DNA from: Ranitomeya imitator
Taxonomy: Eukaryota
DNA: 64,000 nucleotides
Direction: 5' to 3'
Assembly: GCF_032444005.1 (NCBI RefSeq)
Contig: NC_091290.1
Location: 36,332,001-36,396,000, forward strand
The notes under the pieces were generated by a model that had not been told where the DNA came from, did no database searches, and saw only the letters and a list, made by a program, of their open reading frames with translations. Each line of letters starts with the position of its first letter. Position 1 is the first letter of the stretch. The position numbers were made by a program, and so were the translations under genes. Below, piece by piece: positions 12,701-63,292 of the stretch.

Positions 12701-15700
12701 GAGTGCCTATGATCCTGAAATATATACAGTACTGGAGGAACTGGCGGGGAGAGCCGCGGGGACGGGAGAGCCATGGGGACGGGGGAATCTGGTAACCTAA
12801 GTGCCTACGATCCTGAAAATATACAGTCCTGCGGGGACGGGAGGAGCATGGCCTAGGGCATCTGGTAACCCGAGTGCCTACAATCCTGAAATATATACAG
12901 TTCTGTGGGGAACGGAGCTGAACCGCAAGGGCTGGGGCATCTGGTAACCTGAGTGATTACGATCCTGAAATATATGCAGTCCTGCGGGGATGGGAGGCGA
13001 GAGTTACCGGATGAGCTATTTTATCCATGACATTGCTGGATCTGAGCCAGGCGCCTCTTCTTTCTGACCAGACACAACTTACCTTGGAGCACCCCGGAGT
13101 AAAAGCCCCTGGAACGCCAAACAGAACCCCTTTCTTGTTTCCGAACACATCTCTGATGCTTTTCTTGTTTGCAGGACCTCCATCAAAGATCTGCACATCC
13201 GGTAGAGAATCTCCAACCTTGAAGAGAAATCACCTATCAGACACGTCGGCTTCTTGTTCGCCCCGTTCAGTTTCATATAGGAAACAATGGACCCCTGACT
13301 ATAATAATGGACCCCTGACTATAATGGGCAAGGCAGACCTCCAGATTTGCCACGGGCTTCAGCGTGAACCTAGCACTAGAGATCAGGACCTTACATTGAC
13401 CATGGGACAAAACAACAAATGATAAAAAATGAGCAAGAAGTGATTTGGAGCCGGAATATCACACAGTAGAAGAAACCAGACCTCAGTGAAGGAACGGATC
13501 GTTTTTTTTCTAACTGTAGAAGTGCATGAAAGTGAAGTAAGGAATGTGGAATAACCGGGGCGGTAATGGCGGCCGTGGTGTGGCCACCCAGCCGACCGTA
13601 AGCTAATACAAAAGCCACATGTGTTGCAACTGATTTCATGGCGGAAACATGTTGCAAAAAATGAAGCTAGTGCAATCTAAAAAAAAAAAAATCGTATGCA
13701 AATATAAAAAAAGCATTTTATCCTTAAGATTTTTACAATTAGTTTTTACTTTAATCTCTAGAGAGTTCATGAACCAAAATAAATAAAAATGTAAAAACTC
13801 TATGGAACATGCACAGTGTGAACCCAGCTGAAAATGGACAAAAGGAGACGTGCACCTGACTCCCCCTGGACGAACAAGGTGTCCAAACATCATAGGGTCT
13901 ATAACGGCCCACCTTTATCAAAAATCGGGAATTTGCACTAAATGGTGCAGACACTTCAGCTCCACCACCTCATTCTTATCAGAGGTCACATCCGAATGAG
14001 GAATTTGGTACAAATTACAGCACAAATTGTTCGGTGCTTTAAAGGGGTTGTCCGGCCTTAAGGCTACAAGTCTGCAGTCATTCTACGTGACTGCAGACTT
14101 GTGAATGCTCACATCGTGCACATTGCTTGCTGTGCGGATTCTCCAGGAATGGTGGGCTCATGACCACAAGTTGGTGATTTTCACTTTCGGCCACATTCCG
14201 ACTAGACGTGTCGGGTCTCGCTGAATACACTTGCACTGAGCTAGGCAGTGCACGTCTAGTTGGCATGTGACAGTAGGCATGCAAATCACATACAAGCTGC
14301 TGATGGAGAATCCTCACAAGTCTGCAGTCACAGAGTTTAAGGCCGGACAACCCCTTTAATATTGATGGCTACTATGCAGTTAACTGAGCTGTGCTGTTCC
14401 GCAACTAATCGTCATACACGGCGCATACTAAGAGCAGCCGCCTTCATACACGAGCAGGCGCACACTAAGAGCAGCCGCCTTCATACACGAGCAGGCGCAC
14501 ACTAAGAGCAGCCGTCTTCATACACGAGCAGGTGCACACTAAGAGCAGCCGTCTTCATACACGAGCAGGCGCACACTAAGAGCAGCCGTCTTCATACACG
14601 AGCAGGCGCACACTAACAGCAGCAGTCTTCATACACGAGCAGGTGCACACTAAGAGCAGCCGCCTTCATACACGAGCAGGCGCAGACAGAGCAGCCGTCT
14701 TCATACACGAGCAGGTGCACACTAAGAGCAGCCGCCTTCATACACGAGCAGGTGCACACTAAGAGCAGCCGCCTTCATACACGAGCAGGCGCAGACAGAG
14801 CAGCCGTCTTCATACACGAGCAGGTGCACACTAAGAGCAGCCGCCTTCATACACGAGCAGGCGCAGACAGAGCAGCCGCCTTCATACACGAGCAGGCGCA
14901 CACTAAGAGCAGCCGTCTTCATACACGAGCAGGCGCAGACAGAGCAGCCGCCTTCATACACGAGCAGGCGCAGACAGAGCAGCCGCCTTCATACACGAGC
15001 AGGCGCACACTAAGAGCAGCCGCCTTCATACACGCGCAGGCGCACACTAAGAGCAGCCGTCTTCATACACGAGCAGGCGCAGACAGAGCAGCCGTCTTCA
15101 TACACGCGCAGGCGCACACTAAGAGCAGCAATCTTCATACACGAGCAGGCGCACACTAACAGCAGCAGTCTTCATACACGAGCAGGCGCACACTAAGAGC
15201 AGCCGCCTTCATACACGAGCAGGTGCACACTAAGAGCAGCCGCCTTCATACACGAGCAGGCGCAGACAGAGCAGCCGCCTTCATACACGAGCAGGCGCAC
15301 ACTAAGAGCAGCCGCCTTCATACACGAGCAGGCGCAGACAGAGCAGCCGCCTTCATACACGAGCAGGCGCAGACAGAGCAGCCGCCTTCATACACGAGCA
15401 GGCGCAGACAGAGCAGCCGCCTTCATACACGAGCAGGCGCAGACAGAGCAGCCGCCTTCATACACGAGCAGGCGCACACTAAGAGCAGCCGCCTTCATAC
15501 ACGAGCAGGTGCAGACAGAGCAGCCGTCTTCATACACGAGCAGGCGCACACTAAGAGCAGCCGTCTTCATACACGAGCAGGCGCACACTAAGAGCAGCCG
15601 TCTTCATACACGAGCAGGCGCACACTAAGAGCAGCCGTCTTCATACACGAGCAGGCGCACACTAAGAGCAGCCGTCTTCATACACGAGCAGGCGCACACT

Positions 15701-18515
15701 AAGAGCAGCCGTCTTCATACACGAGCAGGCGCACACTAAGAGCAGCCGTCTTCATACACGAGCAGGCGCACACTAAGAGCAGCCGTCTTCATACACGAGC
15801 AGGCGCACACTAAGAGCAGCCGTCTTCATACACGAGCAGCCGTATACTAAGAGCAGCCGTCTTCATACACGAGCAGGCGCACACTAAGAGCAGCCGTCTT
15901 CATACACGAGCAGGCGCACACTAAGAGCAGCAGGCTTCATACACGAGCAGGCGTACACTAAGAGCAGCCGTCTTCATACACGAGCAGGCGCACACTAAGA
16001 GCAGCAGGCTTCATACACGAGCAGGCGTACACTAAGAGCAGCCGTCTTCATACACGAGCAGGCGCACACTAAGAGCAGTCTTCATACACGAGGAGGCGCA
16101 CACTAAGAGCAGCCGTCTTCATACACGAGCAGGCGTCTTCATACACGAGCAGCCGCCTTCATACACGAGCAGCCGCCTTCATACACGAGCAGGCGCACAC
16201 TGAGAGCAGCCGTCTTCATACACGAGCAGGCGCACACTAAGAGCAGCCGTCTTCATACACGAGCAGGCACACACTAAGAGCAGCCGTCTTCATACACGAG
16301 CAGCCGTATACTAAGAGCAGCCGTCTTCATACACGAGCAGGCGCACACTAAGAGCAGCCGCCTTCATACACGAGCAGGCGTCTTCATACACGAGCAGCCG
16401 CATTCATACACGAGCAGGCGCACACTGAGAGCAGCCGTCTTCATACACGAGCAGGCGCACACTAACAGCAGCCGTCTTCATACACGAGCAGGCGCACACT
16501 AAGAGCAGCCGTCTTCATACACGAGCAGGCGCACACTAAGAGCAGCCGTCTTCATACACGAGCAGCCGTCTTCATACACGAGCAGGCGCACACTAAGAGC
16601 AGTCGTCTTCATACACGAGCAGGCGCACACTAAGAGCAGCCGTCTTCATACACGAGCAGGCGCACACTAAGAGCAGCCGCCTTCATACACGCGCAGGCGC
16701 ACACTAAGAGCAGCCGTCTTCATACACGAGCAGGCGCACACTAAGAGCAGCCGCCTTCATACACGCGCAGGCGCACACTAAGAGCAGCCGCCTTCATACA
16801 CGCGCAGGCGCACACTAAGAGCAGCCGTCTTCATACACGAGCAGGCGCACACTAAGAGCAGCCGTCTTCATACACGAGCAGGCGCACACTAAGAGCAGCC
16901 GTCTTCATACACGAGCAGGCGCACACTAAGAGCAGCAGTCTTCATACACGAGCAGGCGCACACTAAGAGCAGCCGTCTTCATACACGAGCAGGCGCACAC
17001 TAAGAGCAGCCGTCTTCATACACGAGCAGGCGCAGACAGAGCAGCCGTCTTCATACACGAGCAGGCGCACACTAAGAGCAGCCGTCTTCATACACGAGCA
17101 GGCGCACACTAAGAGCAGCCGTCTTCATACACGCGCAGGCGCACACTAAGAGCAGCCGCCTTCATACACGAGCAGGCGCACACTAAGAGCAGCCGCCTTC
17201 ATACACGAGCAGGCGTACACTAAGAGCAGCCGTCTTCATACACGAGCAGGCGCACACTAAGAGCAGCCGCCTTCATACACGAGCAGGCGCACACTAAGAG
17301 CAGCCGCCTTCATACACGCGCAGGCGCACACTAAGAGCAGCCGTCTTCATACACGAGCAGGCGCACACTGAGAGCAGCCGTCTTCATACACGCGCAGGCG
17401 CAGACAGAGCAGCCGTCTTCATACACGAGCAGGCGCACACTGAGAGCAGCCGTCTTCATACACGAGCAGCCGTATACTAAGAGCAGCCGTCTTCATACAC
17501 GAGCAGGCGCACACTAAGAGCAGCCGCCTTCATACACGAGCAGGCGCACACTGAGAGCAGCCGTCTTCATACACGAGCAGGCGCAGACAGAGCAGCCGTC
17601 TTCATACACGCGTAGGCGCACACTAAGAGCAGCCGCCTTCATACACGCGCAGGCGTATACTAAGAGCAGCCGTCTTCATACACGAGCAGGCGCACACTAA
17701 GAGCAGCCGCCTTCATACACGCGCAGGCGCACACTAAGAGCAGCCGCCTTCATACACGCGCAGGCGCACACTAAGAGCAGCCGCCTTCATACACGCGCAG
17801 GCGCACACTAAGAGCAGCCGCCTTCATACACGCGCAGGCGTATACTAAGAGCAGCCGTCTTCATAAATAACTAAGTTGAGCATGTAAACATGAAATACAT
17901 AAAACCTGCATTGCATTACTGTGCTAGAAAATAGTTAACATTGAGAATACTTAGCACATAAATCATGTGTGCCCGGCAGCCACGATAAGGCGATTCTTGT
18001 TGCTGGGAACCTCACCATAAAGTCGGCCAGATTTTGTCTCTTCCTAAACGTTTCGGGTCTTTTTAAGACCGCCATGACTGCAATAGGCAACTTTTTTTTC
18101 CCTTTTTCATGTAGAAATGCAGTCATACAGCCGTCGTACTTCTCTGCTCTCTGTAATTTTAGATTTTACTGCAAATACTAGAGAATTCATGTAATACATA
18201 GAGAAACCCTGGATACACGTAGTTCAGGCGTTTCTGACAACAATCTGAGGCATAAACGCCCCGTGTGCGCGGTGTCAGTTATGGGACTTCAATCCCTGAC
18301 GTTATTACACGCCAGCACTGATATAAGAGCTATTATTAGCACAGGGCGCTATTCTCAGCCCTGATAACGCTCCGCACTGGCCGCATGCGCCCTGGGGTCC
18401 GGTGTACACACCGCGCGGTTACCTTGATGGACATGGCTCTGCTCCACACTCCGCTCCTGGCGACTGCACACAGCTGTGACTGGAGGAGGACTGATACGGG
18501 CAACCGAAGAGCCAT
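9637..18515 (-). CDS. PRDX5: Peroxiredoxin-5, partial gene. Coding exons: 18515-18423, 13217-13083, 9768-9637. Remaining exons lie outside the window.
   Basis: Spliced product MALRLPVSVLLQSQLCAVARSGVWSRA-MSIK|VGDSLPDVQIFDGG...VLFGVPGAFTPGCSK|THLPGYVTQA...ACISVNDAFVVSEWGKVHGADGK. It has the peroxidatic PGAFTPGCSKTHLP motif. All junctions are GT-AG, phase 0. Confidence 0.96.
10338..10760. mobile_element. T2/Kolobok-type MITE
   Basis: TTAA flanks. TIR AGGGAATCTGTC / GACAGATTCCCT. Confidence 0.8.
11419..12997. repeat. Minisatellite, ~74-75 bp unit with variable ~21-bp inserts, in PRDX5 intron 2
   Basis: GGTATCTGGTAACCAGAGTGATCCTGAAATATATACAGTC recurs (11541, 11616, 11690 and onward). It diverges toward the right end. 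Confidence 0.95.
13083..13217 (-). CDS. PRDX5: PRDX5 coding exon 2 (135 nt), containing the peroxidatic Cys
   Basis: Acceptor tcttcaAG at 13219-13218, donor GTaagt at 13082. Encodes VGDSLPDVQIFDGGPANKKSIRDVFGNKKGVLFGVPGAFTPGCSK. Confidence 0.96.
14043..14355. mobile_element. T2/Kolobok-type MITE
   Basis: TTAA|AGGGGTTGTCCGGCCTTAA ... TTAAGGCCGGACAACCCCT|TTAA. Confidence 0.85.
14413..17864. repeat. Minisatellite, 37-bp unit, ~93 copies, in PRDX5 intron 1
   Basis: Unit ACTAAGAGCAGCCGYCTTCATACACGAGCAGGCGCAC (e.g. 14464, 14501), with shorter variant units. Confidence 0.97.
18423..18515 (-). CDS. PRDX5: PRDX5 coding exon 1: mitochondrial transit peptide plus second in-frame ATG (18434, MSIK)
   Basis: Donor AAG|GTaacc at 18422. 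ATG 18515 is in strong Kozak context (GTCATGG). A further in-frame ATG at 18599 has weak context. Confidence 0.85.
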
Positions 18516-18759
18516 GACAACTATGGGCAGGGCCACAAGGGGGCGGCGGCATGGCTCTGCAGAAAGTACGCCCACCAGCGGCAAGCTGAATGAGCGCATG
18601 CGCGTGTCTCTCACCCCTAGCGCGCTTGCGCTTAGAACCTCCTTGCGTTCGTGAACGGTTACCTAGCTACACAGAGTGGAGGCGGAGCTACAGACCTGCG
18701 GTGACCTACGTCCCCGGAAGTAGTTCAAGTGTGAAGCACGTGGGTGCCGGTACCGGAGA
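18516..18759. promoter_or_regulatory. Bidirectional CpG-rich promoter shared by PRDX5 and TRMT112
   Basis: Lies between two divergent start codons. Contains an NRF1-type GCGCATGCGC (18594-18603), GCGCTTGCGC (18622-18631), an ETS motif CCGGAAGT (18714-18721) and an E-box CACGTG (18737-18742). Confidence 0.8.
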
Positions 18760-24800: not shown

Positions 24801-27800
24801 GAACAGACTGAGACAACTTTTTATCTGGTTTCAGGTGTGATTTTCATATTGCCCACACCTGTTACTTGCCACAGGTGAGTTTGAACGAGCATCACATGCT
24901 TGAAACAAAGTTGTTTGCCAACAATTTTGTCCTGTCTATTTTGGGGGTTTGGTGTGAAATTGTGTCCAAGTTGCCCTTTTCCTGTTTTTTTTTTTCTATT
25001 GTTACGTCTGTATTATAAAATGTGTGTAATTTCAATAATGTTCTGGGAGAAATACTTAATTTTTTAGGAACAATTTCAAGGGTGCCAACACTTTCGGCCA
25101 TGACTGTAACTACATTCAGCCAGTAATGTTTGATGATATATATATATATATATACTGGCACCACCTACATAACTGACTCTTGTGCATATACAGAGCTGTA
25201 GAACCCAATTTGGGTATGTTCACACAGGGCATGTTTAATTTTTTTCTGCATGAAAAATGCAGTGCGTGCGTTTTTCCAACATGGCAGCCATGGGGGTCTT
25301 CAGCAGGTAGACATGCAAGTGTGCTCGAGCACCAGCCCTCCTCAACAGTCACATAAAACTCACCTGTGTAGACATTAATGTTTGCCAGGTTTGATCTGTC
25401 ATAACTATGTCTTATTCCTGTTCTTTCCTGCACAATTTCTATGGAGCGATGCCCCTTTTTGTACTGAGCAGCGCCCCTTTTCTACGGAGCAGCGCCTTTT
25501 CTCCGGAACAGTGCCCCTTTTCTATGGAGCAGCGCCTCTTTTCTACGTAACAGCGCCCCTTTTCTACGGAGCGGTGCTCCTTTTCTACGGAGCAGGACCT
25601 TATTTCATCTTTCCCTCTTGCAGCACTAGATGGCGCCGTACTAGGATGCATTCTAGAATACCTAGCCTCCGCTCTGTATTATTTGTTCTGAATGACTTAA
25701 TGTTTTCTCTGCTTTGATTTTAGGCCGAGGAGGTGAAGCTGAATTCTGTGGACTTTAACCGCGAGTTTGTGACTCGTATGATTCCTAAGCTGGAATGGGA
25801 GGCCCTGGTGCAGTCCGCAGAGAGCGTGAGAATCCTTAATTCACTCCAGCATCTGTGTATAAATAAAAATGTAGCATCGCTCGTCACATTTAATCATTTT
25901 TTAACCTTTTTTTTGTGCTACTTTTATTTCTTCGGTTATAATAATATAGAATAGACTGCACCTGGTCTTTCTTCATACTCTCACTTCCAAACGATACCTC
26001 CAATATTCACTATAAAAAAAAAACCCCCCACAAAAACAGTGACCCTGCAATAAGTGTTCATGGATTTCAAGCAGCAATATTTAGGATACGGCTACATCGA
26101 GACTGTGGCTGTGATACAGGGGACGTGTCCAAAAATCATTATGTATAGCTGCGTCAAAAATTCCATATACCGTATATACAGTACAGACCAAAAGTTTGGA
26201 CACACCTTCTCATTTAAAGATTTTTCTGTATTTTCATGACTATGAAAATTGTACATTCACACTGAAGGCATCAAAACTATAAATTAACACATGTGGAATT
26301 ATATACATAACAAAAAAGTGTGAAACAACTGAAATTATGTCTTATATTCTAGGTTCTTCAAAGTAGCCACCTTTTGCTTTGATTACTGCTTTGCACACTC
26401 TTGGCATTCTCTTGATGAGCTTCAATAGGTAGTCACTGGGAATGGTCTTCCAACAATCTTGAAGGAGTTCCCAGAGATGCTTAGCACTTGTTGGCCCTTT
26501 TGCCTTCACTCTGCGGTCCAGCTCACCCCAAAACCATCTCGATTGGGTTCAGGTCTGGTGACTGTGGAGGCCAGGTCATCTGGCGTAGCACCCCATCACT
26601 CTCCTTCTTGGTCAAATAGCCCTTACACAGCCTGGAGGTGTGTTTGGGGTCATTGTCCTGTTGAAAAAGAAATGATGGTCCAACTAAACACAAACCTGAT
26701 GGAATAGCATGCCGCTGCAAGATGCTGTGGTAGCCATGCTGGTTCAGTATGCCTTCAATTTTGAATAAATCCCCAACAGTGTCACCAGCAAAGCACCCCC
26801 CCACACCATCACACCTCCTCCTCCATGCTTCACGGTGGGAACCAGGCATGTAGAGTCCATCCGTTCACCTTTTCTGCATCGCACAAAGACACGGTGGTTG
26901 GAACCAAAGATGTCAAATTTGGACACATCAGACCAAAGCACAGATTTCCACTGGTCTAATGTCCATTCCTTGTGTTCTTTAGCCCAAACAAGGCTCTTCT
27001 GCTTGTTGCCTGTCCTTACCAGTGGTTTCCTAGCAGCTATTTTACCATGAAGGCCTGCTGCACAAAGTCTCCTCTTAACAGTTGTTGTAGAGATGTGTCT
27101 GCTGCTAGACCTCTGTGTGGCATTGACCTGGTCTCTAATCTGAGCTGCTGTTAACCTGCGATTTCTGAGGCTGGAGACTCGGATAAACTTATCCTCAGAA
27201 GCAGAGGTGACTCTTGGTCTTGCTTTCCTTGGGCGGTCCTCGTGAGCCAGTTTCATTGTAGCGCTTGATGGTTTTTGCAACTGCACTTGGGGACACTTTC
27301 AAAGTTTTCCCAATTTTTCGGACTGACTGACTTTCATTTCTTAAAGTAATGATGGCCACTCATTTTTCTTTACTTAGAATTTGTATTATGGCAAGAAAAA
27401 AGCAGCTAACAGCCTATTCAGTAGGACTATCAGCTGTGTATCCACCGGACTTCTGTACAACACAGCTGATGGTCCCAACCCTATTTATAATGCAAGAAAT
27501 CCCACTTATTAAACCTGACAGGGCACACCTGTGAAGTGAAAACCATTCCCGGTGACTACCTCTTGAAGCTCGTCAAGAGAATGCCAAGAGTGTGCAAAGC
27601 AGTCATCAAAGCAAAAGGTGGCTACTTTGAAGAACCTAGAATATACGACATATTTTCAGTTGTTTCACACTTTTTTGTTAAGTATATAATTCCACATGTG
27701 TTAATTCATAGTTTTGATGCCTTCAGTGTGAATGTACAATTTTCATAGTCATGAAAATACAGAAAAATCTTTAAATGAGGTGTGTCCAAACTTTTGGTCT

Positions 27801-34639: not shown

Positions 34640-34945
34640 TAGTGATGAGCGAATATACTAGTTACTCGAGATTTCTCGAGCATGCTCGGGGGTCCTCCAG
34701 AGTATTTTTTATTGCTCGGAGATTTAGTTTTTATTGCCGCAGCTGAATGATTTACATCTGTTAGCCAGCCTAAGTACATGTGGGGGTTGCCTGGTTGCTA
34801 GGGAATCCCCACATGTAATCAAGCTGGCTATCAGATGTAAATCATTCAGCTGCTGCAATAAAAACTAAATTTCCGAGCACTAAAAAAATACTCGGAGGAC
34901 CCCCGAGCGTGCTCGAGAAATCTCGAGTATATTCGCTCATCACTA
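34640..34945. mobile_element. Palindromic hAT-type MITE, 306 bp
   Basis: TIR TAGTGATGAGCGAATATAC. Perfect 8-bp TSD TTCCTATT (34632-34639 and 34946-34953). Confidence 0.9.
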
Positions 34946-36079: not shown

Positions 36080-42649
<6,570 letters not shown>

Positions 42650-49169: not shown

Positions 49170-49950
49170 TATAATTGTGAGTCCCTATAACGTGGACACA
49201 CGTGCACAGCCCATCCCTGGCCGTCCATACACTTGTGCACACACTGTCACCACAGTCCCCACTCGTGCCATAACTCACGCCAGGCTCCTGTGTCGCTGCC
49301 CGTGGCCCCGGCTCAGGACACTCACTCTCCCCACTCGTGCATACCTTGTGTGTGCGTCTCCTCCCGTGCAGGCTGCTGTCCGTGCACACAGTAGTGTAGG
49401 ACACGGCAGAGGACGCGGCTCACACTCACACACACTCCGTGTCACACACTCACACACTTCCTACACTGGCTCCTCCTCCCGCGGGGAAGGGGCGTGGCCG
49501 GGCACGCTGAGCAGCCGCACTGCCGCCGCCGAGTAGTGTCCGGCATTGGCGGCCGGTGCGGTGCGCGGAGCTGACTGGCTGCGGTCCGGCTTCATTACAT
49601 ATGCTATGAGGGGGGCACGATGGATAAATATCTCCGTGTCCTGCGCCGGGGCCGGCGGGGGCTGTGTGCAGCGGGCACAGACGGCTGGTGCAGTAGTGTC
49701 CCCGGCTCTGAACGACCTTGTGTGCGACCTTGAGGCAGAGTGAAGTCACCGTGCAGCTCCCGTCACTCCTCCTCAGCCTCCCTGTGGTCACAAGTTTGTC
49801 AGTGACACTGCGGTGACCTTCAGCAGCTGATCCGCGCCGTCTGCCAGGGAGACGGCAAACAGCGTTACAGGCAGAGGAGTACCATGTCCTTCATGTCACC
49901 TCTACCGGGAGAAGAGCCCCCCGCAGCCCAAACACGTCCGGAGAGAACTG
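49170..49950 (-). promoter_or_regulatory. ESRRA: CpG-rich putative ESRRA promoter and non-coding exon 1
   Basis: High CpG density, a GC box GGGCGTGGC near 49488 and an ETS core CACTTCC near 49455. Candidate minus-strand donors AAG|GTATGC (49344) and GA|GTGAGT (49325). ERRE-like sites at 49713-49822. The first coding exon has an acceptor, so an upstream exon is required. Confidence 0.65.
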
Positions 49951-58572: not shown

Positions 58573-59524
58573 ATTCAGAGGGGGAACATGCTTTTCTTTT
58601 CTCTTCGGAATGTTTCTGATAAATCCTTTGTTTGTAAATATATGTAACTTGTATCCACTTGTATCACAAACATTTTGCAAATATCATTAAACCCTAATAG
58701 TTGCCTAACTGGTGAATCTACCTGAAATATACTATAATGCGGAACCCCTCGGCTGTAATGCATACTGAGTTTAACATGAAACGTTCAGTGTTTTATCACT
58801 ATGGGTCAGGGTACAGTCTGGTAGGGGAAGAGTCATATGACACCTGTAATTACAGAGTGACCTTCAAGATGTCCTTGAGGAAACACGGAAAGGAATTCAG
58901 CAGCAAAAGAAATCACAAAGAGAAAAAAAAAAAGAAGTTTGTTAATCCCTTCGTCATTATGCACAGGTTAGATGCTGCAATTTTTATGTATTTTTATGTC
59001 AGTTAAAATATATAAATTGGGATGTGAAGGTTTGTAACTAGAAATAGGAATAATAAGACTTAAATAATATTCTGCAGCTGTCATGTAATACTGGCACAGG
59101 TGAGGATACTTCTGTCCTGGGCATACGGTATTAAAGGGGTGATCATTCTAGCACCCTGGGGGAGGGCAGAATTACTTTATGGAAATTTGGTGCCAGTTCT
59201 GTCTGGCATTTCCCTAGTGAGTCTATGATTGATGCCAATCGAAGATTTGTAAACCGACTGACACAACTGCATAAATCAGAATGCATTCATGAACGTATAG
59301 AGTTGTGTTCACACATTGCATGTTTGATGAAGATTTTACACATGGATTTGATGCAAGCAAATTCATCAGCATTTTACAGTACCAGCAAAGTGGGCGAGTT
59401 TTAATCTCATCTACATTTTATGTACTGAATCAGTGCAGAAACAGGCTTTTGTTTTGTTTTTTGTTTTCCTTAAATCCGCAGCATGTCAATTTCTATTGCG
59501 ATAGTTGCAATAAGCCCAATGTAA

Positions 59525-61939
59525 GGCCGCCGTCACACATGCGAGTTTTACGGACGTAAGAGCGCAGAATCTACGTCCGTAAAACTCGCAAAAAATACGG
59601 CACAATTATTCTCTATGCCCCTGCTCCTATTTGCCGTATTTTACTGATCAGTATTATACGGTCTTCTACGGCCGTACAAAATCGCAGCATGCTGCGTTTG
59701 TCACCGTACTGCGCAAGAAATACGCCAATGAAAGTCTATGGAAGCGTGAAAAATACGGATCACACACGGACAAGCAGTGTGACTTGCGAGAAATACGCAG
59801 CGCTGTTAGAGAGAAAAGCCGGCAATTCAGTGCGGTGTACAGTAAAATCACACTGACAGCTTACAGTAGAATAGGTAGAATAAATGTGTACACAGAGAAT
59901 AGGTATATATATATATATATGTCAGTGAGACACATATATGTATATATATATTAATATTTATTCCAGCGCTATACAGCTTGAAAGCCGGTAATTCAATTAC
60001 CGGCTTTTTCTTTCTCCTTCCTAAAACCCGACATGATTTGAGACATGGTTTACATACAGTAAACCATGTCTTCTCTCCATTTTTTTTGCAGATTCCACAC
60101 TACTAATGTCAGTAGAGTGTATCTGCAAAATTTGGCCGTTCTAGCTCTTAAAATAAAGGGTTAAATGGCGGAAAAATTTGGCGTGGGCTCCCGCGCAATT
60201 TTCTCCGCCAGAGTAGTAAAGCCAGTGACTGAGGGCAGATATTAGTAGCCTGGAGAGGGTCCATGGTTATTGGCCCCCCCTGGCTAAAAATATCTGCCCC
60301 CAGCCACCCCAGAAAAGGCACATCTGGAAGATGCGCCTATTCTGGCACTTGGCCACTCTCTTCCCATTCCCGTGTAGCGGTGGGATATGGGGTAATGAAG
60401 GGTTAATGCCACCTTGCTATTGTAAGGTGACATTAAGCCTAATTAATAATGGAGAGGCGTCAATTATGACACCTATCCATTATTAATCCAATTGTAGTGA
60501 AGGGTTAAATAAAACACAAACACATTATTTAAAATTATTTTAATGAAATAAAAACAATGGTTGTTGGAGTATTTTATTCAACGCCCAATCCAGTCACTGA
60601 AGACCCTCGTTCTGTGAAAGAAAAAACATAATAAACCAACAATATACTTACCCTCCGCAGATCTGTAACGTCCAACGATGTAAATCCTTCTGAAGGGGTT
60701 AAAACATTTTGCAGAAAGGAGCTGTGCTAATGCAGGCTGCTCCTCGCTGCAAAACCCCAGGGAATGAGGCTAAAAATAGATCAATGATCTATATTTAGCT
60801 TCATTTGCGGTGAGGCGCCCTCTGCTGGCTGTTCATAGATCGTGGGAAATTACCTAGAAAGCTCCCAGGCTTTCTAGGAAAGTTCCCACGATCTATGAAC
60901 ATCCAGCAGAGGGCGCCTCACCGCAAATGAAGCTAAATATAGATCATTGATCTATTTTTAGCCTCATTTCCTGGGGTTTTGCAGCGAGGAGCAGCCTGCA
61001 TTAGCACAGCTCCTTTCTGCAAAATGTTTTAACCCCTTCAGAAGGATTTACATCGTTGGACGTTACAGATCTGCGGAGGGTAAGTATATTGTTGGTTTAT
61101 TATGTTTTTTTACTCACAGAACGAGGGTCTTCAGTGACTGGATTGGGCGTTGAATAAAATACTCCCACAACCATTGTTTTTATTTCATTAAAATAATTTT
61201 AAATAATGTGTTTGTGTTTTATTTAACCCTTCACTACAATTGGATTAATAATGGATAGGTGTCATAATTAACGCCTCTCCATTATTAATTAGGCTTAATG
61301 TCACCTTACAATAGCAAGGTGGCATTAACCCTTCATTACCCCATATCCCACCGCTACACGGGAATGGGAAGAGAGTGGCCAAGTGCCAGAATAGGCGCAT
61401 CTTCCAGATGTGCCTTTTCTGGGGTGGCTGGGGGCAGATGTTTTTAGCCAGGGGGGGACCAATAACCATGGACCCTCTCCAGGCTATTAATATCTGCCCT
61501 CAGTCACTGGCTTTACTACTCTGGCGGAGAAAATTGCGCGGGAGCCCACGCCAATTTTTTCCGCCATTTAACCCTTTATTTTAAGAGCTAGAACGGCCAA
61601 ATTTTGCAGATACACACTACTGACATTAGTAGTGTGGAATCTGCAAAAAAAATGAAGAGAAGACATGGTTTACTGTATGTAAACCATGTCTCAAATCATG
61701 TCGGGTTTTAGGAAGGAGAAGGAAAAAGCCGGTAATTGAATTACCGGCTTTCAAGCTGTATAGCGCTGGAATAAATATTAATATATATACATATATGTGT
61801 CTCACTGACATATATATATATATATACCTATTCTATGTGTACACATTTATTCTACCTATTCTACTGTAAGCTGTCAGTGTGATTTTACTGTACACCGCAC
61901 TGAATTGCCGGCTTTTCTCTCTAATATATGTGTCTACTG

Positions 61940-61976
<37 letters not shown>

Positions 61977-62227
61977 GTATATATATATTTTCTTTTCTTT
62001 TTGGGACACATGGATCACTTCTATAGCGGTATGTTGGTTTTGCTAGCCTGCGAGAAAACCACGCAGTACGGATGCCATACGGATTACATACGGAGGATGC
62101 CATGCGCAAAAAACGCTGACACACCCTGCCTACGGAGGAGCTACGGACCACTTTTTTCGGGACTTTTCAGCGTATTACGGCCGTAATATACGGACCGTAT
62201 TGTTTTACGCTGTGTGTGACGCCGGCC
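59525..62227. mobile_element. Harbinger-type non-autonomous foldback element, 2703 bp
   Basis: TIR GGCCG(C/G)CGTCACACA, with TAA TSD at 59522-59524 and 62228-62230. Internal inverted arms at 59806-60862 and 60869-61924. Confidence 0.88.
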
Positions 62228-62271
62228 TAAGGTGGAGATATTTAGATTAGTGGGGTATGCGCTCACCTTTT

Positions 62272-62486
62272 GGGTCACATTCACACTAGCAGTATTTGGT
62301 CAGTATTTTACATCAGTATTTGTAAGCCAAAACCAGGAGTGGGTGATAAATGCAGAAGTGGTGCATATGTTTCTATTATACTTTTCCTCTATTTGTTCCA
62401 CTCCTGGTTTTGGCTTACAAATACTGATGTAAAATACTAACCAAATACTGCTAGTTTGACGGCAGCCTGATAGTGTGAATATGGCC
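62272..62486. mobile_element. Harbinger-type MITE, same family as 28307-28474
   Basis: GGGTCACATTCACACT ... AGTGTGAATATGGCC|TTA. Shares the internal CATCAGTATTTGTAAGCCAAAACCAGGAGTGG palindrome. Confidence 0.7.
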
Positions 62487-63292
62487 TTACCCTAGTAAAG
62501 GCTTGCAGATTTGCGATCTGTCAGCTGTGACCTGATGAAGACACCAATTCATAGTCGAAACGTGTTACCTGAATATCTTTCCAATAAAGGAACCTTGACT
62601 TTATCTTCTATTCTGTTTGTTGTTTGGATTTAGTCATTGATTTTAATGGATACTCTAAGTCCGAAGATTAAACTGCTGGCCTGGCAATGTTTTGCTGCAT
62701 TTTATGGTGCATTACTACAAAAAAAAAAAAACATCACAAATAAAAATGCATGAATAAGTTCTGAAAATTTGCAAGGATTTTTGATGCAGAAATGCGACAG
62801 ATTTCAGGTTAGAAATTCACGAGTAAAATTAGCACCAAATATGCAATGTGTGAACCCAGACTAACAGTACTGAACAGAGGTCACAAATATAGTCATTAGG
62901 TTGCAATTGAACGCCAGACGAAATAAATAGATGGACAGTAAACGACAACAACGCTGCAGGGTCACATACCAAGAAACAAGAACTGAGCTGGTTTAATTTG
63001 GTTATTTGGGATTTTGTGATTTCCCCCTTGCGTTTGACTATCTACATAGCAAAATATGCAATAAATAAAGAACATAGGCTGCAAACGAGATTCCGCCATC
63101 CAGATCCAGAGCCACGTCACTACTGCTCTAATTATCATCCAACTATGTGAAGTAATATTCATGGTGATCTGATGGACAAAGTGGCTAAAGGGACCAAGGT
63201 GAAGGTGGCAAAAATGCACAACCCTCTTCACAATACTCAGTTTGCCAAAATAGTAGTGCAGCGCAATGCTGGAATAGTAATGTCACATCCCT

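What the first reader, a model, noticed from the sequence alone, without database searches (positions are those of the whole stretch)
59525..62227. Foldback transposon carrying a divergent CTCF pair at its hairpin tip: a possible mobile chromatin boundary
Seen: a Harbinger-ended element (TAA TSD) whose interior is a palindrome of two ~1056-bp arms separated by 6 nt (TCCCAG, 60863-60868). Near the tip each arm carries CCAGCAGAGGGCGC, a perfect match to the CTCF core CCASYAGRKGGCRS. It is in reverse orientation at 60815-60828 and forward at 60903-60916, 74 bp apart. Established: a reverse-then-forward (divergent) CTCF pair is the typical layout of TAD boundaries, because it blocks loop extrusion from both sides. 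Inference: the foldback geometry turns one motif into a two-sided boundary, so each insertion of this family could create an insulator. Here the reverse motif is convergent with the forward CTCF-like site at 25623-25636, which would enclose ESRRA and its promoter in a ~35-kb loop.
Basis: partly seen in the sequence, partly recalled or inferred. Interest (0 to 1): 0.75.

Follow-up and report, generated by a model that had tools for sequence, protein, structure and literature searches.

The report
Rearranged frog MITE with mirrored CTCF motif
A non-coding Harbinger-type jumping-gene copy upstream of the poison-frog ESRRA gene has folded part of its interior back on itself, which mirrors one CTCF-type motif into a back-to-back pair; the structure is real, but it looks like a one-off repair accident in a very abundant repeat and nothing shows that it works as a chromatin boundary.

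Summary
Window 59525-62227 is a TAA-flanked element with 15-nt terminal inverted repeats. Its interior is a palindrome with 1057-bp arms, 98.2% identity and the spacer TCCCAG. The only two exact matches to CCASYAGRKGGCRS in the 64 kb lie 74 bp apart, back to back, around the tip.

- The two motifs are one motif, copied by the inverted duplication.
- Every part of the element is very high-copy repeat DNA, roughly 10^4 copies or more for the tip module, and it also occurs in two other organisms.
- In those two organisms the repeat carries the motif once. It runs straight through the spacer and continues after 60871 with unrelated sequence (CGAGTTCATA...).
- The palindrome junction therefore lies at a 3-nt inverted microhomology, AGC/GCT, around a 6-nt loop. 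This is the signature of snap-back synthesis.
- So the foldback looks like a derivative of this copy or a minor subfamily, not a family design that would drop a two-sided insulator at each insertion.
- The proposed loop partner at 25623 has one mismatch.
- CTCF occupancy, methylation and insulation could not be tested.

Transposon-borne CTCF sites are already well known. The scan has noted other CTCF-motif repeats and snap-back palindromes in this genome, but not this family. Interest is low to moderate.

The parts
59522..59524 (.). left target-site duplication TAA
   Evidence: Contigs of other copies begin to match at 59524, and an organism-B flank reads ...CTT|A, i.e. TTA.
59525..59539 (+). 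left terminal inverted repeat GGCCGCCGTCACACA
59525..59805 (+). left end module, 281 bp, non-palindromic and rich in TACGG/CCGTA subterminal motifs
   Evidence: CpG o/e is 1.2-1.4. Summed word depth is about 1e6 in X1. An organism-B contig covers 59679-59802 with 1 difference and ends at 59802.
59806..60862 (+). left arm of the palindrome. At the tip it is contiguous with the spacer and with GCT, as in other species' copies.
60815..60828 (-). exact CTCF core CCAGCAGAGGGCGC, reverse orientation
   Evidence: The core is intact in organism-B contig 60467-60828, whose 3 differences fall at 60499, 60580 and 60715.
60860..60871 (+). AGC-TCCCAG-GCT: a 3-nt inverted microhomology around the 6-nt loop. 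The fold-back junction lies at 60871/60872.
   Evidence: Contigs of organisms B and C follow the window up to 60871 and then read CGAGTTCATA.... That continuation is absent from the window.
60869..61924 (+). right arm, the reverse-complement copy of the left arm
60903..60916 (+). exact CTCF core CCAGCAGAGGGCGC, forward orientation (mirror copy)
61925..62212 (+). right non-palindromic part: a TA-rich tail followed by the high-copy right end module. The first 35 nt of the tail repeat 61792-61826.
   Evidence: Depth is 2.6e5 for 61922-62072 and 1.0e6 for 62073-62223.
62213..62227 (-). right terminal inverted repeat GGCCGGCGTCACACA
62228..62230 (.). right target-site duplication TAA

Best explanation
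This is one copy of a very abundant, non-coding PIF/Harbinger-type transposon (a MITE-like element) in a poison-frog genome, about 10 kb upstream of the probable ESRRA promoter. Its interior suffered an inverted duplication. A DNA strand that ended in ...AGC-TCCCAG-GCT snapped back on itself: GCT paired with AGC, leaving a 6-nt loop. The strand was then extended using itself as template, which produced a second, reverse-complement copy of 1057 bp. The repeat module at that place already carried one consensus CTCF core 34 bp from the break, so the duplication mirrored it into a reverse-then-forward pair 74 bp apart. What is shown: the anatomy, the high copy number of all parts, the single-motif linear form in two other organisms, and the position of the junction at the microhomology. 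What is inferred: the snap-back mechanism, which probably occurred during double-strand-break or excision-gap repair, and an age of a few million years from 1.5% arm substitutions. The pair is most likely a by-product without a selected function. CTCF could bind such a strong motif if the copy is unmethylated, but nothing here shows that it does.
For: - The TIRs, the TAA duplications and the lack of coding capacity are shown.
- Contigs of other copies start exactly at the TIR (records 2, 9 and 25).
- The arms are 98.2% identical, and their differences are spread evenly and are mostly substitutions.
- Both arms share letters that are rare in the family. At 60499/61232 the family majority letter holds 92-100% of depth. 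At 60715 the majority letter holds 97%, and the mirror base is the same because 60715 is not among the arm differences. The arms are therefore sisters.
- The organism-B loose end after 60871 reads CGAGTTCATA.
- The organism-C contig, which holds all depth at that place, reconstructs to CGAGTTCATATGATGA... from the listed gaps and substitutions starting at 60872.
- The window lacks that continuation.
- Depth is 2e5-1.7e6 inside the element against 7-12 for the single-copy flanking contigs.
- Published work supports foldback priming at microhomologies next to breaks (PMC11724301) and microhomology-guided template switching inside TIR transposons (PMC8277862).
Against: - The linear continuation rests on one contig each from two small runs of other organisms. 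No contig of the source species that bridges or bypasses the tip was listed, so a palindromic subfamily in this species is not excluded.
- The outer junctions (59805/59806 and 61924/61925) show no clear microhomology. A 35-nt direct repeat (61792-61826 and 61925-61958) flanks the outer 98 bp of the right arm, and simple snap-back does not explain this.
- The best DNA run may come from the individual that was assembled, so it is not independent support.
- Absence of function is assumed, not tested.
Confidence: 0.7

Rival explanations
1. One reading: the foldback element is a mobile two-sided chromatin boundary. CTCF occupies both mirrored motifs, blocks loop extrusion from both sides, and encloses ESRRA in a loop with a forward site to the left.
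For: Two perfect core motifs lie in divergent order. Divergent sites are enriched at TAD boundaries (PMC7422557). Frog TADs depend on CTCF/Rad21 with convergent motifs (PMC8270788). Transposons are known to seed CTCF sites in mammals (PMC7786948). The motif is intact in the dominant contigs of three organisms. ESRRA and a CpG island lie between 25.6 and 60.8 kb.
Against: There are no occupancy, methylation or Hi-C data. The module occurs in roughly 10^4 copies and the linear single-motif form dominates in two other organisms, so the two-sided design is not a family property. The partner site has a mismatch and its choice is arbitrary, since another one-mismatch forward site lies at 18533. The region is not a CpG island (o/e 0.5-0.66), so methylation is the default expectation for a high-copy repeat. 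The enrichment of divergent sites reported in PMC7422557 is on a 5-100 kb scale, not 74 bp. Motif retention in a family with many copies at least 99% alike is expected without selection.
Confidence: 0.07
2. Assembly artefact: the palindrome was created by a chimeric foldback read or by a mis-join between two inverted family copies.
For: Long, near-perfect palindromes with tiny spacers are a known product of hairpin chimeras. No listed contig bridges the centre. The best-holding runs may be the assembly's own sample.
Against: The arms differ at 19 columns, mostly substitutions. That is far more than a single-molecule artefact would leave after consensus. The junction sits at a biologically meaningful microhomology, exactly where other species' copies diverge. 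The element is only 2.7 kb, so long reads span it. The left flank-element junction is held without differences by a 712-nt contig (record 1). Runs X1 and X2 hold 85-86% of the sampled words.
Confidence: 0.05
3. A nested or double insertion: a separate element with about 1-kb inverted arms, or a head-to-head dimer as made by Penelope-like or other retroelements, landed inside an older Harbinger MITE.
For: Earlier notes report many head-to-head and snap-back retro-inserted palindromes in this genome. Depth differs about 5-fold between arm segments and end modules, so the element is a mosaic. An organism-B contig of the left end stops at 59802, 3 bp from the arm. The layout arm-spacer-arm-unpaired tail resembles snap-back retro-insertions.
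Against: No target-site duplication flanks 59806-61924. The only similar flanking strings, near 59785 and 62048, are copies of the subterminal motif and are too diverged. No hammerhead or other Rfam family appears in the arms. There is no poly(A) or ORF. Two independent insertions would not be truncated at mirror-identical points.
Confidence: 0.1
4. Functional consequence through RNA: if transcribed, the 1-kb-stem hairpin yields double-stranded RNA and small RNAs that silence the 10^4-copy family. This would be a Mu-killer-like inverted duplication (the comparison is from my own knowledge).
For: The palindrome is near-perfect: the central 152 nt fold at -85.9 kcal/mol, z = -23. Runs guessed to be RNA hold family sequence, with the highest depth at 60563-60713 and its mirror 61016-61166.
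Against: The RNA status of those runs is a guess, and the contigs cannot be assigned to this locus. No promoter was identified and no small-RNA data were examined.
Confidence: 0.06

Closest known systems
Non-autonomous PIF/Harbinger elements (Tourist-like MITEs) of vertebrates
   Same: They have a 3-bp TAA target duplication, short GG-initial terminal inverted repeats, subterminal short repeats, no coding capacity and very high copy number. Autonomous Harbingers are reported for this genome by earlier notes.
   Different: At 2.7 kb the element is long for a MITE. Four fifths of it is an internal palindrome that does not reach the ends.
Rearranged derivatives of cut-and-paste transposons made by abortive gap repair or template switching (Ds and P derivatives, Pack-TIRs; PMC8277862, PMC3814204) and foldback inversions at breaks (PMC11724301)
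   Same: The internal rearrangement has its junction at a very short microhomology, and the inverted copy of adjacent sequence is templated by the nascent strand.
   Different: The inverted copy is 1057 bp, whereas the yeast foldbacks documented are mostly 5-34 bp. The outer junction is unexplained.
Transposon-borne CTCF sites (rodent SINE B2, MER20 and others; PMC7786948, PMC6979391)
   Same: A strong CTCF core sits in the dominant sequence of a high-copy repeat and is shared by related species.
   Different: The carrier is a DNA-transposon-associated module in an amphibian. No binding data exist. Here the motif is doubled into a divergent pair by a palindrome.
Drosophila Foldback (FB) elements
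   Same: Long inverted arms can form a hairpin.
   Different: FB arms extend to the element ends, consist of tandem subrepeats and give a 9-bp target duplication (from my own knowledge). Here the arms are internal and not built of tandem units, and the duplication is 3 bp.

Membership tests
PIF/Harbinger non-autonomous element (MITE-like) | 3-bp target-site duplication TWA (TAA/TTA) | tested here: met
   TAA lies at 59522-59524 and at 62228-62230. Another copy in organism B is flanked by TTA.
PIF/Harbinger non-autonomous element (MITE-like) | Terminal inverted repeats that define the ends of a multi-copy family | tested here: met
   The 15-nt TIRs match 14/15. Contigs of other copies from three runs start to match at 59524.
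PIF/Harbinger non-autonomous element (MITE-like) | No transposase gene of its own | tested here: met
   The longest ORF is 107 aa and lies in low-complexity sequence. The ORFs have no relatives.
PIF/Harbinger non-autonomous element (MITE-like) | Shares its TIRs with an autonomous element that encodes a DDE transposase and a Myb-like partner | not tested
   Earlier notes report young autonomous Harbingers in this genome. Their termini could not be compared here.
Foldback (FB) transposon family | Long inverted arms that reach the element termini and are built of tandem subrepeats | tested here: not met
   The arms end 281 and 303 bp inside the termini. There is no tandem substructure apart from TA-rich stretches.
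Foldback (FB) transposon family | 9-bp target-site duplication | tested here: not met
   The duplication is 3 bp, TAA.
CTCF-site-bearing repeat family (SINE-B2-like role) | CTCF core present in the family consensus | tested here: inconclusive
   The core is intact in the dominant contig of organism B (differences only at 60499, 60580 and 60715). No motif variant is listed for organism C or the source species, but only 40 of 207 variable places were shown.
CTCF-site-bearing repeat family (SINE-B2-like role) | CTCF occupancy of copies in vivo | not testable with these tools
   No ChIP-seq or CUT&RUN data are available.
TAD boundary / insulator | Divergently oriented CTCF motifs | tested here: met
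   The order is reverse at 60815-60828, then forward at 60903-16. The spacing of 74 bp is far tighter than the 5-100 kb scale reported in PMC7422557.
TAD boundary / insulator | Insulation in Hi-C, cohesin retention and enhancer blocking | not testable with these tools
   No contact or reporter data are available.

The most novel reading that the evidence does not exclude
The tip module is a frog counterpart of rodent SINE B2. In this reading it is a repeat of roughly 10^4 copies, shared by several dendrobatid species, whose consensus carries a perfect CTCF core that CTCF actually binds. Rare snap-back derivatives such as this one would then turn the one-sided site into a compact two-sided boundary, here about 10 kb upstream of the ESRRA promoter.
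Probability: 0.07. Interest if true: 0.55.

Novelty: new member of a known kind. Interest (0 to 1): 0.25.

Why it matters
If CTCF bound these copies, a DNA-transposon-associated repeat would be shown to spread architectural-protein sites in an amphibian with a giant genome. A natural palindromic derivative would then give a clean one-sided versus two-sided comparison at 74-bp spacing. As it stands, the locus mainly documents a 1-kb snap-back inverted duplication inside a Harbinger-type element, with the junction resolved to a 3-nt microhomology. That is a tidy example of a known repair mechanism, not a new regulatory principle.

Tried and rejected
- I searched for further copies of the family so as to build a consensus and compare motif decay with arm decay. 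The window holds no second copy of any part.
- An exact look-up of ten ORFs from the element and a word search with the 74-aa ORF were blank.
- Two metagenome scans were blank. One used a 24-mer beside the motif and one used a 23-mer of the left end.
- The single read-laying run returned only 40 of 207 variable places and short contigs, so the conservation test could not be done.
- Rfam gave only sub-threshold hairpin (miRNA-like) hits and no hammerhead, so a Penelope or retrozyme origin was dropped.
- I looked for a target-site duplication around the palindrome. Only the recurring subterminal motif was found.
- I considered a TA duplication of a Tc1-like long-TIR element at 59807/61923. I rejected it because the arm ends do not resemble such termini and TA is palindromic by itself.
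- The joints listed between mirror positions have 22-36 letters on the short side. They fall at local small palindromes, so I did not use them as evidence for other foldback copies.
- I did not score the motif with a position weight matrix, because none was available from a tool.

Full report
**Observation**

Window 59525-62227 begins with GGCCGCCGTCACACA and ends with the complement of GGCCGGCGTCACACA, a 14/15 match. Both ends are flanked by TAA. Inside it, 59806-60862 and 60869-61924 are reverse complements of each other, separated by TCCCAG. The arms are 1057 bp long and 98.2% identical over 1058 columns. The 19 differing columns are 16 substitutions and two indel events. They are spread along the arm and none is a CpG transition.

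The consensus CCASYAGRKGGCRS has exactly two perfect matches in the 64 kb, against 0.04 expected. They lie at 60815-60828 on the minus strand and at 60903-60916 on the plus strand, 74 bp apart. Two corrections apply:
- The two matches are mirror images of one another, so they count as a single chance event.
- The proposed loop partner at 25623 is GCACTAGATGGCGC, with one mismatch. A second one-mismatch forward site lies at 18533 in a CpG-rich stretch.

**Context**

Earlier notes of the scan identify the genome as a Ranitomeya poison frog with young autonomous Harbinger elements. I did not test this myself.

An ERR-type receptor gene lies on the minus strand. Its DNA-binding exon is at about 42.35-42.44 kb and its last coding exon ends near 36.08 kb. 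The C-terminal 40 residues match human ERR1 (ESRRA) end to end and match it best. The only CpG-island-like stretch upstream of the gene is at 49.2-49.8 kb. The element thus sits about 10 kb upstream of the probable promoter.

**What the element is**

It has no ORF above 107 aa, and none of its ORFs has relatives. No Rfam family reaches its threshold, and there is no hammerhead.

Contigs of four public runs were laid on 58600-63100:
- The flanks have word depths of about 7-12. Examples are the 712-nt contig 58835-59546 with no differences and the 882-nt contig 62441-63100.
- Everything from about 59506 to 62525 has summed depths of 2e5 to 2.6e6 in the source-species run.
- The same stretch is also present in two other organisms.
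- Contigs from three runs begin to match exactly at 59524. One organism-B copy is flanked by TTA.

The TIR is therefore the true terminus of a very high-copy family with the TWA target of PIF/Harbinger elements.

Summing mirror-image bins gives about 4e5 for the tip, about 2.3e6 for the mid-arm and about 1e6 for the left end. The element is thus a mosaic of modules of different abundance. The tip module that carries the motif has a copy number of roughly 10^4. This figure is rough, because the tool warns that depth is not a copy number.

The high depth beyond 62227 belongs to a second, adjacent Harbinger-like hairpin MITE.

**How the palindrome arose**

The decisive detail comes from the other organisms.
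- An organism-B contig of 362 nt matches 60467-60828 with three differences. By their distances to the contig ends, these fall at 60499, 60580 and 60715, so the CTCF core is intact in that species.
- Another organism-B contig follows the window through the spacer to 60871 and then reads CGAGTTCATA.
- In organism C, one contig holds all the depth at that place. It follows the left arm, the spacer and GCT. From 60872 onward it can be aligned to the right arm only by dropping 12 of 29 bases. Reading the retained bases gives CGAGTTCATATGATGA..., the same continuation as in organism B.
- The window contains no such sequence.

In two other species, then, the repeat is linear at this point and carries the motif once. 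The palindrome of the window starts exactly where homology to them ends.

That point is AGC-TCCCAG-GCT. A strand ending in GCT can pair with AGC six bases upstream and prime copying of itself. This is the foldback mechanism documented at double-strand breaks in yeast (PMC11724301). It fits the microhomology-guided template switching described for the interiors of TIR transposons (PMC8277862).

Both arms also share letters that are rare in the family. One is G/C at 60499/61232, where 92-100% of depth has the other letter. The other is A at 60715, where 97% has C. The arms are therefore copies of each other and not two independent insertions.

With 1.5% substitutions between the arms, and assuming no gene conversion, the event is a few million years old at typical vertebrate neutral rates. 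This is an inference from my own knowledge.

The outer junction remains unexplained. The right arm is followed by a 35-nt direct repeat of 61792-61826, and no microhomology is evident at 59805/59806.

**Could it be an artefact or a nested insertion?**

An artefact is unlikely, for three reasons. The arms differ by real substitutions. The junction is biologically meaningful. The element is short enough for long reads to span. However, I could not show a read that bridges the centre, and the best runs may be the assembly's own sample.

A nested retro-insertion of a snap-back palindrome is suggested by other notes on this genome. It lacks a target-site duplication, a hammerhead and a poly(A) tail.

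**Function**

Transposons that carry CTCF sites are well known in mammals (PMC7786948, PMC6979391). Divergent sites are enriched at TAD boundaries, although on a 5-100 kb scale (PMC7422557). Frog TADs need CTCF and Rad21 and show convergent motifs (PMC8270788). The idea is therefore coherent.

The specific claim that the foldback geometry makes every insertion of the family a two-sided insulator is contradicted by the linear single-motif form in the other species.

Several points argue against occupancy:
- The module has about 10^4 copies.
- The surroundings are not a CpG island, with CpG o/e of 0.5-0.66.
- According to earlier notes, this genome holds satellites with 1e5-8e5 CTCF-like units. 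Strong motif matches in repeats are therefore commonplace here.

Motif retention across three organisms is expected without selection in a family in which about a fifth of the contigs are at least 99% alike.

A different possible consequence is a long hairpin RNA that feeds silencing of the family. It is equally untested. The central 152 nt fold at -85.9 kcal/mol as a perfect hairpin.

**Verdict**

The structure is a Harbinger-type non-autonomous element with a secondary snap-back inverted duplication that mirrored a pre-existing CTCF-type motif. The mobile-boundary reading is possible for this single locus but unsupported, and as a family property it is contradicted. Novelty is that of a new member of known kinds. 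Interest is 0.25.

Noticed in passing
window 62269-62467: A second hairpin MITE lies directly after the element. Its arms are 62281-62342 and 62398-62459, 97% complementary. It has the highest depth of the whole stretch, up to 2.6e6. The consensus end from other copies reads TTA|GGCCACGTTCACAC, and its right end GGCTGCCGTCAAACT resembles the TIR of the main element.
   Followed up: partly
window 14420-17865: A CpG-rich 37-bp satellite with about 94 copies and 91% matches. Its CpG o/e is about 1.0. It carries no CTCF core.
   Followed up: partly
window 49201-49800: This is the only CpG-island-like stretch (GC 0.65, o/e 0.8) upstream of the minus-strand ESRRA gene, and it is probably the promoter. 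ESRRA has its DNA-binding exon at about 42.35-42.44 kb, and its last coding exon ends at about 36.08 kb.
   Followed up: partly
window 60563-60713 and mirror 61016-61166: In run X3, which is only guessed to be RNA, this arm segment is 3-10 times deeper than its neighbours. In DNA it is shallower than its neighbours. The segment contains an exon-like end followed by GTAAGT. It may be a transcribed part of the repeat family.
   Followed up: no
window 34663-34929 and 36372-36592: Two further short hairpin repeats. Their arms are 130 and 108 nt, with 7- and 5-nt spacers and 88-91% complementarity. The second lies just inside the 3' part of ESRRA.
   Followed up: no
window 26209-27779: A Tc1-like element with 242-nt inverted ends that are 96% complementary. 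The one-mismatch CTCF-like site at 25623 lies about 590 bp outside it.
   Followed up: no
window 61026-61575 (right arm) and its mirror: The word TTAACCCTT recurs four times in one orientation within the arm. This is reminiscent of piggyBac-type ends at TTAA, but no inverted partner was found and its meaning is unknown.
   Followed up: no
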